Shown: one piece after another, positions 4,243 to 62,986 of the stretch
How the letters are laid out: each line of letters starts with the position of its first letter
Position numbering within the stretch: position 1 is the first letter of the stretch
The notes under the pieces: model-generated
What the model was told of the DNA's origin: nothing
Seen by the model: the letters and a program-made list of their open reading frames with translations, nothing else
Databases searched by the model: none
Position numbers and translations under genes: made by a program
NCBI RefSeq assembly: GCF_001194135.2
Contig: NC_068986.1
Coordinates: 90,681,444-90,745,443 of the forward strand
Length of the DNA: 64,000 nucleotides
Direction: 5' to 3'
Source: Octopus bimaculoides
Lineage: Eukaryota

Positions 4243-4365
4243 ATTGTTGAAGAACATTGATTATGCCCCCAACACACTCTATCTTCATACAGCTATACGC
4301 TCTTCTATATACACCTGTTGTACCATTACAAATACACATTCCTGCTGCATAACATCCATTACATC
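4243..4365 (-). CDS. Gene A coding exon 2 (6-Cys module): (G)CNGCYAAGMCICNGTTGVYRRAYSCMKIECVGGIINVLQQ
   Basis: Acceptor tttttcttacAG and donor GTAAGT; 123 nt, phase 1-1, open. Paralogous to 19942-20061 and 59741-59863. Confidence 0.9.
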
Positions 4366-4914
4366 CTGTAAGAAAAATCGAAATGTTGTTTACGTGAGGA
4401 GTGAAGCAGTATTCTATGGCATAATTTGAAAGAAAGTTCCAGAGGCATAGAATAATTTTCTAATATTTTGAGAAAAATCATATGGACGGCTTATGAATAT
4501 TGACTTAGGAGGAACATCTGCTAAAGACATAAAAGGAAAATAATCACAGGTTAGTTGTAAGTTTGCAATATAACACTTTTTTAACACAACTGTATGTAAG
4601 AAATCTAAAATGCTTATTTACATAAGAGAGATGTCTACTGTTTGAATCCAGACAAGTACGCCAGAAAACCATTCTATACATGCGTTAGTAATTATGCTTT
4701 TATGCAAAGTTATGTTTTGGAAAGAGACTGTTAAATGTGGCTATTAAAATGTGAATTATTTCTTTATTGAATAAGCGTTTAAGCTTTATTTCCCGTAAGA
4801 TTCGGAGAAATATCTGGAGGGTTTTAAATATTAGCTGGGCGCATATCAGTGTCTTATAAAGTCAACTCAGTGGTATGAATAGACAATCAGTAATCTATGA
4901 ATATTGAAACATAC

Positions 4915-4990
4915 CTGTATGATTATATGAAATCACAACAACAATTATTGGAAGTAGAAGAAAAATCAAAACTCTCAGAAATATATACAT
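4915..4990 (-). CDS. Gene A coding exon 1, signal peptide: MYIFLRVLIFLLLPIIVVVISYNHT(G)
   Basis: ATG directly after acceptor tacAG; hydrophobic core; donor GTATGT; phase 1 joins exon 4243-4365 in frame. Confidence 0.88.
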
Positions 4991-5155
4991 CTGTAAAGTA
5001 GAGTAAACAAACGAAAATTTATTCGCTTTATTTTTCATAGTATTAATAATAAATAACTTCTATAAAGGAGTACCTCTTGAGTATGTCTAATAATTTATCT
5101 GTCAAAGTACACTTTTAAATATTTGGATAATATATATGTATTTTCCTGTTCATAC

Positions 5156-5265
5156 TGGCACGATCACTTCAGGTGATGTCACAGTGCGTGTTATCTAATA
5201 AAACTTCAATCAACAGAACAAAAATACGTTTTTAAAGAAGCTTCAAGACACTACCATCAAGGTAT
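5156..5265 (-). other. Probable 5' non-coding exon / proximal promoter block of gene A
   Basis: Donor GTATGA at 5155 gives a 165-nt intron to the ATG exon, the same length as in gene C. The block is homologous to about 57760-57871. The 5' boundary is uncertain. Confidence 0.55.
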
Positions 5266-5429
5266 TTACCAATGTAAGTATTTTAAATCAAGTGTACTGT
5301 CATTCTACAGAAAAGTGTTTTAATTGATAGCATGGGAAAATGGTATGCATCAATATATGCATAGAAATGTGCATTGTAATCAGCGCAGAAACGAAGAAAC
5401 CCGTCTATCTCTTACTCCGTCTAGATCAC

Positions 5430-58965: not shown

Positions 58966-59740
58966 ATTACTTAGCTGTTTGTCACTCAGGTTGTGCAGCT
59001 TTCAAATAATTTCATGCTATTTGGAGGAGGGGCGATGCAATTATGCAATTTCTGCAACGCATGTGACATGTAATATGATAGGTAGAAAATACTTGAGGTT
59101 TAAATCTTAAGTCTTACTGTAGACTAGTTGTAATGTTTTACGTAATAGATTTAATTTAACATCAAAACATAACATGGCTCACGGTTTGATTTAACAGATT
59201 CCATGTTGCTGCAAGCAATGGAGTTATAAAAAATTAATATTATGCAAACATATGAAGAATTGTACCCAGGAATTGTTAGCTGAATTCGGACGCAACTCAG
59301 CTACTCAAATAATAGATATGTCTCCCTTGGAACAAAGTCACTGAATTATTTTTGCCTTTTGTACGTTCTGCACCTCCTCTTGAACGGCTACACAAGGCTT
59401 TACTAAAAAATATCTCTTTAACTATTGACTACCTACAAAGTAGGTTTTCTTTTAAGTCTGTAAATACGTTTTAACAATACTTTTCTAAGTCTCTGCAGCT
59501 CTAACCTAATTTACAATACACTCTTTCTCCGCTTTTATTTTTACTTTTTTATAATTTTCTCGTTATGTTTGTTACGCGTCATAACCCCCACTTGATTTTT
59601 CTCCTCGTTCTCTCTAATATATTATTTACTTAACACCCAAAAATCGAATTTTCACCGCAATTTCAAGTAGAGTAAATCTCAAACTAAACTAAATGCTAAT
59701 CCACATCTTCAATCAAAGAAAAACGTTTCTCTTTTTACAG

Positions 59741-59863
59741 AATGTAATGGCTGTTATTTGGACGGAAAATGCTTTTGTAATCATACGGTAGGCCTTTTTA
59801 GAACACTGTATGAATGTAAGGAAATAATGTGCGTTGAAAAAACATACACAATTTTAAAGTGGT
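59741..59863 (+). CDS. Gene C coding exon 2: (E)CNGCYLDGKCFCNHTVGLFRTLYECKEIMCVEKTYTILKW
   Basis: Acceptor aacgtttctctttttacAG and donor GTAAGT; 123 nt, phase 1-1, open. Confidence 0.9.
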
Positions 59864-62103
59864 GTAAGTAAAAATCTAAAATGTTTCCTCCACATAATTC
59901 CTATTCCAAACATTTTTATGTTGTCAATAAACTTTATGTAGTTTTTAAAAAATCAATTAATTAATAATACCTTTTCAATGAAGAAGGGAATAAAGGGACC
60001 TTTTGAAATTGTTTTGCTCACTACATTACATTAGCATTCGCTTAACTATTGTATTTTATACAGAAGCTAAGTAACTTCTCTCAATTATTACACAACGTGA
60101 TCTTGTCATCTCGTGAATTTTTTTGTACATCAATATAGTGAGCCTTTATCACTGAATCTTGCAAGTGCTGGAAAGGCTATGCTTCACAGAAACGGCTGAG
60201 TAAAAGTGAAACGTACTCAATGCTGTCAGATTAAATTATGTTTTCAGTCCTTCATTCCATGTGTAATTCGAATTTTAATTAAATTTTCTGAGTAGTTTCT
60301 TTTACTTAGACCGGTTTGTATTATTACCAGTCATTGAGACTGTTTCCATTTTCATTGCAAAGGTAACTTTAATTCGTTGAAATTTTTGTTTCATTACGTT
60401 ATGTTAACTCTCCCTCATTTACGTTACCACAGTTTTCGTTTTTATAAGTAATTTCTAGCATAGTTCTTGTATACTATGATTTTTATAACAAATATCTGAC
60501 TTCCATTTCGTAATGTATTCTACTTTTGTGAAATTGTTTTATAACCATTTCTTACACTTATAAATTGAAATACATGTGTCAGTGGATGAAGTTCCTATAA
60601 GCTCGAAAATTACTAAGAGGAAATTTAGGAGGAAGATAGTTCTCGATCGAAAATATTGTACAAAATGTTTTGTTTGAATACTAGTATTTTTGTGACAGAA
60701 GAGAATTCCTTACATGTACACCGTCAATTTATTCACAGGAGAAGAGACTGGAGTAATAAGTACAGAATAGACAAAGAGATCCACACGCCAAAGAGGAGAA
60801 ACTATTAAACAACAATAAAACCACTTTAACTTCAGGATGGCAGCCCAGGATGAAATCAGGTTGTCTGTGGACAATGTAACACAGAAGTCGTCGTGTGTGA
60901 TGCGAAGGTAGTGTAGGACAGCAATAGCAATAGATACAGCGATAAGTAGGAACAACGAAAAGCCTTTTCATAATCAGGTTAAACAAGTCCTCTTTCAAAA
61001 TCTAGGAAAGACATAACATCACAGCGTTAGCAAGACACACATGGTGTTCAAAAAAAATATTTGTCAACTAGAGACTGCTGAAAACGTGCTAACCGTATCT
61101 CAATAGAAACAGGAGTTGAAAATTATTTGGCAAAAAAGAATTATCCTGAACATTTCGCTACACCCCGGAACATTTCTGAACTCTAAAAGCGAGATTTTTC
61201 TCTCATACCCTCATGAATAGAAGAATATTTTATGTAATTGGTCGAGCCCAATTACACTAATCACTGTTGGTTACCCCTTTTCATGTTTATTACAGCCTTT
61301 ATATATTCATCCTTTCTTGCGTACTGTGACTCACATTCTTTCCTCCCCTCTGACCATTGCTTTAGAACTATATACTTCCTCTTCCCCTATATCTCTTTCA
61401 CCTTTCACCTCCCTCCCTTCCTTCATATCTGTCTTACTCTCATTCGCTCTTTATGTCACTTCCTTGCTTTCTCATTATTTTAAAATATTTCCCCAAAATA
61501 ACATATACACACAGGCATATATTTAATATTCCTCCACAAACTGGTAAATTACAACCACCTCTGTCTCTCATATTTCCTTCCTGACTCCTCTCTTTCATCC
61601 TCTCCCTTCATTCCCACTCCGCTCAGATATATATATATATATATATACACACNNNNNNNNNNATATATATATATATATATATATATATATACACACACAC
61701 ACACAAGTGTATTGAAGACACGTTGTACATTAATCAGGCTTACAGGATGTAATTTTAACTTCACAGGCCAATCTGGGGAAAATAAGTCTGGAAAGGCTAA
61801 ACCCTGCATTGCATATTGCAGAGATTTTTCGATGGGGTTTCAGGGTATGACAAGGTTCTTTCTTATTTTTACTACAATCAAGAACTCCGAGTTGTTGACC
61901 GAAACTTTTTCTTTCGATCCTTCGGTTCAAAATAGTCCAAACTATATATTTCCGATTGGCCATGTCTAGTAATTATTTAATAAGTTTTTCCTTCTGTAGA
62001 GAAGCTTAACTATTTATGAAACTGCCCGGTAATATTTGGTCGTATGTGAACCTTAATTTAATAATACTGTATAAAATGAGCACGTGTGTGTGTTAAGAGA
62101 AAT

Positions 62104-62796
62104 CGGATCTATTTTAAAACGGGGGCGCCAGTATTTTCTTAACGAAACACTAACGAAACACTTTGAAACTTGGGACACTGGTAGAATGTGTCATATAAAA
62201 CATCTTTTACTCTTAGTCTTCTGAACAAAAAAAAGGAATTCGCAAGTTATTCCATGTTAAAGTTGTCGTATTTCTGTAATTTCAACCAATCACTGACGTC
62301 TATTCAGCTGAATAGAGTTACTGCTGGGCGGTCATAAAAATGTTATTCCCTGTGACATATTTCATCCGGTTTAATCGTAATTTATACGCATATATTGTTT
62401 ATATAATAAATTACGCTGTGCGTATCTATATGCGTAACAATTTTAGAGTTCGGATTCTAGAGTTAGGGTTACGGTTACGGTTAACAGTCTAGTTAGGGTT
62501 AGGGTTAGTTTTAGGGTTAGGGTTACGGTTAACAGCCTAGTTAGGGTTAGGGTTAGGGGATTAATACGATATACACCGTTACAGCGCTAACTGTTTTCAA
62601 CTGAATAGACGTCAGTGATTAGTAGAAATTATCGAAATAAGACAATTTTTTACATGAAATAAATTCGAATACAAAATTTTTTTTCTGTTCTATAACACAA
62701 AATAGATAAGTATACGAAGTTTGAAAGTCTTTCGGTACCAAAAACACTACATAAAACATAAATGAAAACTGGCGCCCCCGTTTTAAAATAGATCCG
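62104..62796. mobile_element. 693-bp MITE with perfect 29-bp TIRs, 6-bp TSD and an internal TTAGGG-type array
   Basis: CGGATCTATTTTAAAACGGGGGCGCCAGT at both ends; AGAAAT duplicated; TTAGGG/TTACGG repeats at 62460-62560. Confidence 0.9.
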
Positions 62797-62854
62797 AGAA
62801 ATCAGTAAAAATATGCATTTCAAGTATTATGATGAATTGTAATTGCCTTTTCAG

Positions 62855-62986
62855 ATTGTAAAGACAATAAAGGAAATTGCTTGGAACATGGAGAACATCG
62901 TGTCGGTGTTATAAACAATCAATGTGTCACATTTACTTGTATAGTATGGCGTCAAATACCACGAATGGGTGTACGGCGAAATTTTA
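62855..62986 (+). CDS. Gene C coding exon 3: (Y)CKDNKGNCLEHGEHRVGVINNQCVTFTCIVWRQIPRMGVRRNF
   Basis: Acceptor gccttttcAG and donor GTAAGT; 132 nt, phase 1-1, open. Confidence 0.9.

What the first reader, a model, noticed from the sequence alone, without database searches (positions are those of the whole stretch)
4243..62986. Toxin-like evolutionary pattern: fixed cysteines, hypervariable loops
By hand count, exon 3 of B and C shares 21 of 43 residues, concentrated in CKDNKGNCL and CVTF. Loops and C-terminal halves differ in charge and character (C: WRQIPRMGVRRNF, strongly basic; B: LVNELHMKVLYNA). Intron edges remain alignable, for example aacgtttc before the exon-2 acceptor and GTAAGTAAAC after exon 3. 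Conserved scaffold with divergent loops is typical of venom-peptide and immune multigene families under diversifying selection. Positive selection here is inferred, not measured.
Basis: partly seen in the sequence, partly recalled or inferred. Interest (0 to 1): 0.7.

Follow-up and report, generated by a model that had tools for sequence, protein, structure and literature searches.

The report
Octopus-only secreted cysteine-rich gene cluster

Summary
The window is Octopus bimaculoides chromosome CM046606.1, about 90.68-90.75 Mb. It carries three intact paralogues: A and B on the minus strand and C on the plus strand. Each has four coding exons with phase 1-1-1 introns. Each encodes a signal peptide plus a mature protein of about 108 aa with 12 invariant cysteines.

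B and C share exactly 21 of 43 exon-3 residues. All assembly gaps lie in introns or between genes and are flanked by (AT)n.

The family has at least 16 loci on this one chromosome and was found only in Octopus species. It has no Pfam or PDB sequence match. AlphaFold models resemble tandem fibronectin type I module pairs only weakly.

I measured selection. The scaffold is strongly constrained: CKDNKGNCL shows 5 synonymous and 0 nonsynonymous differences between B and C. Loop pN/pS is 0.7-0.8 between old paralogues, where dS is saturated, and 1.0-1.5 in two recent pairs. A site-model test (M1a vs M2a) gives p from 3e-5 to 0.05 depending on the codon-frequency model.

Fast evolution on a fixed scaffold is shown. 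Diversifying selection is suggested but not proven. "Toxin" is untested.

The parts
4915..4990 (-). Gene A (old RefSeq LOC106869796), coding exon 1: ATG plus signal peptide MYIFLRVLIFLLLPIIVVVISYNHT, phase-1 donor
   Evidence: Spliced model with GT-AG junctions; aligns with exon 1 of B at 20840-20935
4243..4365 (-). Gene A exon 2 (123 nt, phase 1-1): first cysteine module GCNGCYAAGMCICNGTTGVYRRAYSCMKIECVGGIINVLQQ
   Evidence: identical to database protein P0005
97..228 (-). Gene A exon 3 (132 nt): second cysteine module YCRDNAGNCLHVGNVQFGVHNNFCVRFICLIKNNIPRVFVHLEL. Exon 4 lies before the window start; P0005 gives its sequence as VCRLKHIYGSWRKYVTDGLKHC
20866..20929 (-). Gene B coding exon 1: MYIILQVLLLLLVLPIVTEVS (signal peptide)
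19942..20061 (-). Gene B exon 2 (120 nt): DCKGCYYEGKCFCGGLGIIKSAHTCTEIECVNSQPKIKDT
14191..14322 (-). Gene B exon 3 (132 nt): YCKDNKGNCLAAGEKHPGMFNGGCVTFSCLKLVNELHMKVLYNA
12608..12675 (-). Gene B exon 4 plus TGA stop: KCTLQHIYAGVQKYVGDELKYC* (C-terminal helix and the last two cysteines)
17062..17261 (.). Assembly gap (200 N) inside intron 2 of gene B, with (AT)n on both flanks
58037..58109 (+). Gene C (LOC106869804) coding exon 1: MQTFPIVFLSLAVPVSSLVTDLSS (signal peptide)
   Evidence: 100% match to P0001
59741..59863 (+). Gene C exon 2 (123 nt): ECNGCYLDGKCFCNHTVGLFRTLYECKEIMCVEKTYTILKW
62855..62986 (+). Gene C exon 3 (132 nt): YCKDNKGNCLEHGEHRVGVINNQCVTFTCIVWRQIPRMGVRRNF. Exon 4 lies 616 nt beyond the window end (L003 16580-16644)
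61653..61662 (.). 10-N gap inside intron 2 of gene C, with (AT)n on both flanks

Best explanation
A, B and C are three tandem paralogues of an undescribed multigene family that I found only in Octopus. Each gene encodes a signal peptide (coding exon 1) and a mature protein of about 108 aa with 12 invariant cysteines. The mature protein is built from two beta-rich disulfide modules, each encoded by one exon (exons 2 and 3, both phase 1-1), and a short C-terminal helix carrying the last two cysteines (exon 4). The copies arose by old segmental tandem duplication that included the introns. Since then the cysteines, a few glycines and the CKDNKGNC and CVTF core have been held by strong purifying selection. 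Most other positions have drifted at or near the neutral rate, and perhaps a fifth of sites have been pushed by diversifying selection. The most likely mode of action, by inference only, is as secreted extracellular binding proteins. In that reading a rigid six-disulfide scaffold presents variable surface loops and a variable C-terminal helix that set target specificity. The tissue and the target are unknown.
For: SHOWN. Species and locus. Intact four-exon models with canonical GT-AG junctions and conserved phases in A, B, C and seven relatives. All 12 cysteines align without gaps in 10-14 members. Collinear residual intron similarity between B and C and between A and C. The family has at least 16 O. 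bimaculoides loci, all on CM046606.1, plus O. sinensis and O. vulgaris members, and nothing else among 1.84 billion representative proteins. Scaffold motif with 5 synonymous and 0 nonsynonymous differences. Non-cysteine pN/pS of 0.70-0.77. The O. bimaculoides/O. sinensis pair P0010/P0028, which I take to be orthologues, has dS 0.138, dN 0.101 and omega 0.73; exon identity is 90% against 83-90% for locally aligned introns. M2a is preferred over M1a, and none of 32 parametric null simulations reached the observed statistic. The AlphaFold model has mean pLDDT 83.9, about 90 or more across most of the two modules, and shows 2+3-strand modules coinciding with exons 2 and 3. INFERRED: secretion, from the N-terminal hydrophobic segment and the cysteine content; the binding-protein role.
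Against: No expression, proteomic or functional data could be reached. Gene B is absent from the protein database and may not be expressed. The positive-selection signal depends on the codon-frequency model (p=0.053 with equal frequencies). It is diffuse when the alignment is partitioned (p=0.025-0.21). It is estimated on saturated branches. The mean omega implied by M2a (about 1.2) exceeds the omega of 0.55-0.73 measured on the two recent pairs, which suggests inflation on the deep branches. Fold matches are weak, with Foldseek E of 0.007-0.4.
Confidence: 0.6

Rival explanations
1. Old duplicates under relaxed constraint only. The cysteine scaffold is maintained and every other position drifts neutrally. 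The divergent loops reflect age, with dS above 1, and not adaptive diversification.
For: Paralogue dS is 0.64-1.9 and whole-gene omega is 0.26-0.54. Pooled non-cysteine pN/pS is 0.70-0.77, below 1. M1a already assigns 79% of sites to omega=1. The LRT is only borderline with equal codon frequencies (p=0.053) and when partitioned. The recent pairs give omega of 0.55-0.73.
Against: M2a beats M1a at p=3e-5 with F3x4 and p=0.003 with F1x4. None of 32 simulations under the fitted M1a null reached the observed 2dl of 20.8; the maximum was 10.7. Loop pN/pS is 1.0-1.5 in the recent pairs.
Confidence: 0.3
2. One reading: these are venom or salivary toxins, or immune effectors, locked in an arms race.
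For: The proteins are small, secreted and cysteine-rich, sit in a lineage-restricted tandem array, and evolve fast outside the scaffold. That general pattern is shared with conotoxins and with the Mytilus MgCRP-I peptides (PMC4558851 abstract, listed).
Against: There is no sequence or fold similarity to any known toxin or immune family. No paper in the searched library mentions these loci or accessions. From my own knowledge, the described cephalopod venom components are serine proteases, CAP proteins, PLA2, chitinases, tachykinins and cephalotoxins, and this family is not among them. The same evolutionary pattern also fits reproductive, pheromone or mucus proteins.
Confidence: 0.12
3. One or more of the copies, especially the unannotated gene B, is a decaying pseudogene, and its divergence is simply decay.
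For: B is absent from the protein database. It has the longest branch among the local paralogues and a one-codon deletion in exon 2.
Against: B has an intact 127-codon reading frame across four exons, canonical splice sites, a proper stop codon, all 12 cysteines, and a CKDNKGNCL motif kept with only synonymous changes.
Confidence: 0.05

Closest known systems
Tandem fibronectin type I (FnI) module pairs, e.g. fibronectin 8-9FnI (PDB 3ejh, 3gxe) and 2-3FnI (3cal, 2cku)
   Same: These are the best Foldseek matches for both AlphaFold models. Both consist of two consecutive small disulfide-stabilised modules, each a 2-strand plus 3-strand beta sheet. As in fibronectin (from my own knowledge), each module is encoded by one symmetrical phase 1-1 exon.
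   Different: The match is weak: E of 0.007-0.4, TM of 0.4-0.58 normalised to the target, rmsd of 4-6 A and 7-18% identity. There is no Pfam fn1 hit. Cysteine number and spacing differ, with 12 cysteines here, for example C-x6-C-x15-C-x4-C in module 2. An extra C-terminal helix is present. This is a resemblance, not membership.
Hypervariable cysteine-rich secreted peptide families of molluscs: Mytilus MgCRP-I (PMC4558851) and cone-snail conotoxins
   Same: The evolutionary pattern is the same: a lineage-restricted multigene family with invariant cysteines and a highly variable mature sequence between them.
   Different: There is no sequence relationship. The proteins here are much larger, about 108 aa with six presumed disulfides in two modules. 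The signal peptide is not better conserved than the mature part, whereas in MgCRP-I (PMC4558851 abstract) and, from my own knowledge, in conotoxins the pre-pro region is highly conserved. Expression site and activity are unknown.
Ly6/uPAR three-finger domain (UniProt's automatic name for family member A0A0L8H3R2, which is P0009)
   Same: Small, secreted, beta-rich, disulfide-rich.
   Different: No Pfam UPAR_LY6 hit for P0009 at E up to 10. No three-finger structure appears among the top 50 Foldseek matches. The cysteine pattern differs.
von Willebrand factor type C / single-VWC domain proteins
   Same: The C..G....G......C....C spacing in exon 3 first suggested VWC. The VWF C4 domain (6fwn) appears far down the Foldseek list.
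   Different: No Pfam VWC hit. The 6fwn match has E of 1.6 and probability of 0.23-0.28.

Membership tests
Fibronectin type I domain (Pfam fn1, PF00039) | Significant match to the family profile | tested here: not met
   hmmscan against Pfam at E up to 10 gave no fn1 hit for the exon 2+3 peptides or for 10 family proteins. An hmmsearch of the family profile against PDB sequences gave 0 hits.
Fibronectin type I domain (Pfam fn1, PF00039) | Module of about 45 aa with four cysteines spaced C-x(~27)-C-x-C-x(~9)-C (C1-C3 and C2-C4 disulfides; pattern recalled from my own knowledge) | tested here: not met
   Module 2 has C-x6-C-x15-C-x4-C. Module 1 has C-x2-C-x5-C-x-C-x12-C-x4-C. Disulfide connectivity itself is not testable with these tools.
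Fibronectin type I domain (Pfam fn1, PF00039) | 2+3-strand beta fold superimposable on solved FnI modules | tested here: inconclusive
   FnI pairs top the Foldseek list with probability of 0.94-1.0, but with E of 0.007-0.4, TM of 0.4-0.58 and rmsd of 4-6 A.
Ly6/uPAR three-finger domain | Profile match and three-finger fold | tested here: not met
   No PF00021 hit. No three-finger protein among the top 50 Foldseek matches.
VWC / single-VWC | Profile match to PF00093 or fold match to a solved VWC domain | tested here: not met
   No Pfam hit. VWF C4 matches only at E of 1.6.
Venom or salivary toxin family | Expression in the venom (posterior salivary) gland, presence in secreted venom, and toxic activity | not testable with these tools
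   No expression or proteome data were reachable. No paper mentions these loci.
Gene family under diversifying selection | A site class with omega above 1 supported by a likelihood-ratio test that is robust to model choice | tested here: inconclusive
   M1a vs M2a gives p=3e-5 (F3x4), 0.003 (F1x4) and 0.053 (equal frequencies). None of 32 null simulations reached the observed statistic. Partitioned tests give p=0.025-0.21. The tree is saturated.
Gene family under diversifying selection | Loop dN/dS at or above 1 in unsaturated (orthologue-level) comparisons | tested here: inconclusive
   In two recent pairs, pN/pS is 1.51 for the exon-3 loop (Sd 2, Nd 12) and 1.02 for the exon-3 C-terminal half (Sd 3, Nd 11). 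These counts are too small for significance.
Tandemly duplicated, taxonomically restricted secreted cysteine-rich protein family | Several paralogues in an array, shared exon structure, N-terminal signal sequence, invariant cysteines, no homologues outside the clade | tested here: met
   The signal peptide was judged by eye, because no signal-peptide predictor was available.

The most novel reading that the evidence does not exclude
This is an Octopus-specific family of at least 16 genes, so far undescribed. It encodes secreted glycoproteins with six disulfides and a previously unclassified two-module fold. Its surface loops are diversifying under positive selection, because the proteins act as a repertoire of ligands or effectors (salivary, chemosensory or pheromonal, reproductive, or immune) that is an octopod innovation.
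Probability: 0.3. Interest if true: 0.6.

Novelty: new member of a known kind. Interest (0 to 1): 0.4.

Why it matters
Octopuses carry many lineage-specific genes of unknown role. This cluster belongs to a compact, well-defined example. The family has a confident predicted two-module fold but no Pfam entry and no literature in the library searched. Its evolutionary profile has about 20% of sites frozen and the rest at or above the neutral rate. That profile is typical of proteins that meet a changing external partner, such as prey, pathogens, mates or conspecific signals. If tissue expression places the family in salivary gland, suckers or skin, or reproductive tract, it would give a tractable new set of candidate octopod effectors or ligands. 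It would also be a clean system for studying how a disulfide scaffold diversifies. If the loops simply drift, it is an ordinary example of relaxed constraint in a young family.

Tried and rejected
1. Pfam scans of the exon peptides and of 10 full proteins gave no family; only sub-threshold noise such as zf-CW and Tryp_inh appeared.
2. A family-profile search of PDB sequences gave 0 hits.
3. A Foldseek search of viral structures gave nothing meaningful.
4. UniProt's 'UPAR/Ly6' label on P0009 was not reproduced.
5. I looked for the snake-PLA2-like pattern in which introns are much better conserved than exons. It is not present. Paralogue intron flanks are 45-65% identical in global alignment, about background for AT-rich DNA, apart from short patches next to splice sites. 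Exons are 58-70% identical. In the P0010/P0028 pair, exon identity (90%) is about equal to that of locally aligned introns (83-90%).
6. I tried to obtain orthologues of A, B and C from O. sinensis and O. vulgaris. None is annotated in the databases. P0005 is not on record. No tool gives arbitrary eukaryotic genome coordinates, so the direct orthologue test for the window's genes could not be done. Two other family pairs were used instead, and the orthology of P0030/P0013 is uncertain.
7. Six literature searches found no description of the family: locus and accession identifiers, octopus cysteine-rich families, Octo-SAP, salivary-gland proteomes, and orphan genes. A cephalopod venom preprint concerns unrelated cephalotoxins.
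8. One bootstrap call returned no answer, although its results had been saved. A background bootstrap job failed on a numpy import.
9. Partition-wise M0 for the exon-3 C-terminal half gave a tree length of 26 substitutions per codon. It is too saturated to interpret.
10. I rejected the pseudogene reading for A, B and C because frames, splice sites and cysteines are intact.
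Full report
**What is in the sequence**

Copy C lies at 62857-62985 (+) and copy B at 14192-14320 (-). A tblastn search with either exon-3 peptide finds exactly three copies. These are A at 229-110 (-), B and C, at E of about 1e-8 to 1e-11, against 0.1 or worse for the best background hit. A scripted count confirms 21 of 43 identical residues between exon 3 of B and of C.

**Identity of the locus**

The concatenated exon 2+3 peptide of C is 98% identical to Octopus bimaculoides LOC106869804 (P0001, 131 aa). 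The window matches the chromosome-level assembly GCA_001194135.2 at 100% identity. From the locus coordinates, the window is CM046606.1:90,681,444-90,745,443.

**Gene models**

All models have GT-AG junctions and intron phases 1-1-1.

| Gene | Strand | Exon 1 | Exon 2 | Exon 3 | Exon 4 |
|---|---|---|---|---|---|
| A | - | 4915-4990 | 4243-4365 | 97-228 | before the window start |
| B | - | 20866-20929 | 19942-20061 | 14191-14322 | 12611-12675, then TGA |
| C | + | 58037-58109 | 59741-59863 | 62855-62986 | 616 nt beyond the window end |

- The finding's start (4243) and end (62986) are therefore the edges of A exon 2 and C exon 3.
- In all three genes the ATG directly follows a splice acceptor (ttacag|ATG). 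Relatives P0028 and P0030 splice an upstream exon onto the equivalent site. A 5' exon therefore probably exists.
- No further family exon is detectable in the window.
- Gene A corresponds to UniProt A0A0L8HM59 and the old LOC106869796.
- Gene B is not in the 5.8-billion-protein database, even though its own words were part of the query. It appears to be unannotated.

**Assembly gaps**

Only 17062-17261 (B intron 2) and 61653-61662 (C intron 2) lie within a gene. Both are intronic and have (AT)n on both flanks, so frame is not an issue. The ORF listing shows the same TA-repeat flanks (translated as YIYIYI) at most other gaps, and all of those are intergenic.

Continuity across the B gap is supported by exon order, strand and an intron length like that of the paralogues. 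It is not proven. Collinear matches to C's intron lie only on the exon-2 side, and matches to D's intron only on the exon-3 side.

**The family**

- Profile searches recover only Octopus proteins. There are at least 16 O. bimaculoides loci, and every one with a recorded contig is on this chromosome. These include LOC106869794, LOC106872050, LOC106872966, LOC128248058, LOC128248060, LOC128248081, LOC128248166, LOC128248167, LOC128248169, LOC128248170, LOC128248177 and LOC128248178.
- There are also O. sinensis members (LOC118763828, LOC118763690) and O. vulgaris members (CAI9723911, CAI9723912).
- Among 1.84 billion representative proteins, 16 scored at E of 1e-3 or better. Two of these are unrelated long repeat proteins.
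- The loci I fetched fall into two groups, at about 90.57-90.75 Mb (this one) and about 106.8-107.2 Mb.
- All 12 cysteines of the mature protein align without gaps across 10-14 members.
- Exon sizes (about 123, 132 and 65 nt) and intron phases are conserved.
- An old RefSeq model (XP_014771142.1, P0004) fuses A with the next paralogue, D. D therefore lies just outside the window, downstream of A on the minus strand.

**What the protein looks like**

- There is no Pfam match and no PDB sequence match.
- AlphaFold2 with 14 family sequences gives mean pLDDT of 83.9, and about 90 or more over most of the two modules. A 2+3-strand beta module coincides with each of exons 2 and 3. A short helix lies in exon 4.
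- Foldseek against PDB returns tandem fibronectin type I module pairs as the top hits for both models. The scores are weak: E of 0.007-0.4, TM of 0.4-0.58 and rmsd of 4-6 A. I treat this as a resemblance only, because the profile match and the cysteine spacing both fail.
- UniProt's automatic 'UPAR/Ly6' name for one member is not reproduced.

**Selection: pairwise measures**

- Nei-Gojobori estimates over the mature region of the five local paralogues (A, B, C, E and O. sinensis D) give dS of 0.64-1.9 (pS of 0.43-0.69, near saturation). dN is 0.35-0.66 and omega is 0.26-0.54.
- By region, CKDNKGNCL has 5 synonymous and 0 nonsynonymous differences between B and C. Conservation there is therefore selective and not due to recent gene conversion.
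- CVTFxC has pN/pS of about 0.15.
- The exon-3 loop and the C-terminal half of exon 3 have pN/pS of 0.7-0.8.
- All non-cysteine positions together have pN/pS of 0.70-0.77.
- P0010 (O. bimaculoides) and P0028 (O. sinensis) are about 80% identical and collinear, and I take them to be orthologues. They have dS of 0.138, dN of 0.101 and omega of 0.73, or 0.55 for the mature part. Their exons are 90% identical, and locally aligned introns are 83-90% identical. The coding sequence therefore diverges about as fast as intron.
- In this pair plus P0030/P0013, loop pN/pS is 1.0-1.5, but it rests on only 2-3 synonymous changes.
- By contrast, the D orthologues differ at only 3 of 69 residues in exons 1-2 (P0002 vs P0006). 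Rates therefore differ among members.

**Selection: site models**

PAML was not available, so I wrote a Goldman-Yang-type codon likelihood program.

| Data set and settings | 2dl, M1a vs M2a | p |
|---|---|---|
| Five local paralogues, F3x4 | 10.4 | 0.0055 |
| Ten sequences, NJ tree, F3x4 | 20.8 | 3e-5 |
| Ten sequences, alternative tree, F3x4 | 23.1 | 1e-5 |
| Ten sequences, F1x4 (highest likelihood of the three frequency models) | 11.6 | 0.003 |
| Ten sequences, equal codon frequencies | 5.9 | 0.053 |
| Ten sequences, split into two blocks | 3.1-7.4 | 0.025-0.21 |

- For the ten-sequence F3x4 fit, the classes are omega=0.04 (20% of sites), omega=1 (60%) and omega=3.1 (20%).
- In 32 data sets simulated under the fitted M1a null, the largest 2dl was 10.7. 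Saturation alone does not produce the signal under this model.
- Eleven sites have posterior above 0.8. Three lie in the C-terminal half of exon 3 and three in the exon-4 helix.
- Tree length is 11-15 substitutions per codon.
- The mean omega implied by M2a (about 1.2) exceeds the omega measured on the recent pairs.

My conclusion is that very fast evolution on a fixed scaffold is shown. A positively selected site class is suggested but not secure.

**Exon versus intron**

Paralogue introns are largely unalignable. Fixed 120-nt flanks are 45-65% identical, which is close to background. The exceptions are patches next to splice sites and a block upstream of exon 2, where B and C are 78% identical over 128 nt. 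It also shows that the duplication carried the introns and is old. It does not show the pattern of introns far better conserved than exons that is known from snake PLA2 genes.

**Interpretation**

- Shown: a tandem array of intact paralogues from an Octopus-restricted family of cysteine-rich proteins with an N-terminal signal sequence, with a frozen scaffold and loops evolving at or above the neutral rate.
- Inferred: the proteins act as extracellular binders, and their variable loops and helix set specificity.
- Not supported by anything I could test: that they are toxins or immune molecules. There is no homology to a toxin family and no expression data. No paper in the searched library mentions them.
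- The same evolutionary profile fits reproductive, pheromonal or mucus proteins.
- The nearest analogue in evolutionary pattern is the Mytilus MgCRP-I family (PMC4558851 abstract), but there is no sequence relationship.

**Verdict**

- Observation: confirmed.
- Interpretation: partly supported.
- Novelty: a new, undescribed member of the well-known class of lineage-restricted, tandemly duplicated, secreted cysteine-rich families.
- Interest: moderate.

Noticed in passing
window 12608-20929 (-): Gene B is an intact four-exon, 127-codon paralogue. It is absent from the 5.8-billion-protein database although its own words were in the query, so it looks unannotated in current gene sets.
   Followed up: partly
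window 97-4365 (-) and beyond the window start: The old RefSeq model XP_014771142.1 (P0004, LOC106869796) is a chimera of gene A exons 2-3 and exon 2 of the next paralogue, D. This places D just outside the window, downstream of A on the minus strand.
   Followed up: partly
window 58000-58036 (+), 20930-20966 (-); L001 about 9960-10000; L002 about 11880-11919: A stretch of about 40 nt just upstream of the ATG exon (…ATATATTTTAC[GA]TGTGTTTATTCTATTTTACTTACAG|ATG) is much better conserved among paralogues B, C, D and E than the signal-peptide exon it precedes. It may be the branch point and polypyrimidine tract of an intron after a 5'UTR exon, or a promoter element.
   Followed up: partly
window 59656-59740 (+) vs 20062-20146 (-): An intronic block upstream of exon 2 is about 78% identical between B and C, and is recognisable in D and E. 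This is more than exon 2 itself (about 64%). It could be a splicing or regulatory element.
   Followed up: partly
L004/L005 exon 1; L007/L006 exon 1: In the two recent species pairs the signal-peptide region changes faster than expected. P0010/P0028 has Sd 1 and Nd 8. P0030/P0013 has exon-1 identity of 73% against 84% in the flanking intron. This is unlike conotoxin-type families, whose signal sequences are conserved.
   Followed up: partly
window 46363-47025 (+) and 55988-56620 (-): Retrotransposon remnants lie in the B-C intergenic region: a reverse-transcriptase fragment (Pfam RVT_1, E of 6.5e-19) interrupted by a 10-N gap, and a 210-aa ORF with no Pfam hit that by eye looks like the C-terminal part of a non-LTR element ORF2.
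   Followed up: partly
window 10288-10668, 12083-12451, 63057-63225: An interspersed repeat of about 170-380 nt occurs in three copies that are 88-92% identical. One copy lies 70 nt after exon 3 of C and one just after the end of gene B. A second repeat family lies at 6848-7012, 13135-13386, 58378-58630, 58812-58967 and 63715-63877.
   Followed up: no
window 11580-11654 (-): ARAGORN calls a tRNA-Thr (GGT) between genes A and B. It could be a real tRNA gene or a tRNA-derived SINE head.
   Followed up: no
window 62463-62556: A telomere-like TTAGGG/TTACGG repeat (48-nt unit, 2 copies) lies inside intron 2 of gene C.
   Followed up: no
most N runs, e.g. 17062-17261, 23812-24550, 30505-31332, 52646-53530, 61653-61662: Most assembly gaps are bordered on both sides by (AT)n/(TA)n microsatellite. 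They mark unresolved simple repeats rather than scaffold joins between unrelated sequence.
   Followed up: partly
L001 28253-28318 (-); L007 1442-1504 (+); L008 25002-25105 (+): Further family exons lie at the edges of the fetched loci, outside the gene models listed for them. These are an exon-4-like piece convergent with O. sinensis D, and extra pieces in the O. bimaculoides 107.2-Mb cluster. The family is therefore larger than the annotated count.
   Followed up: no
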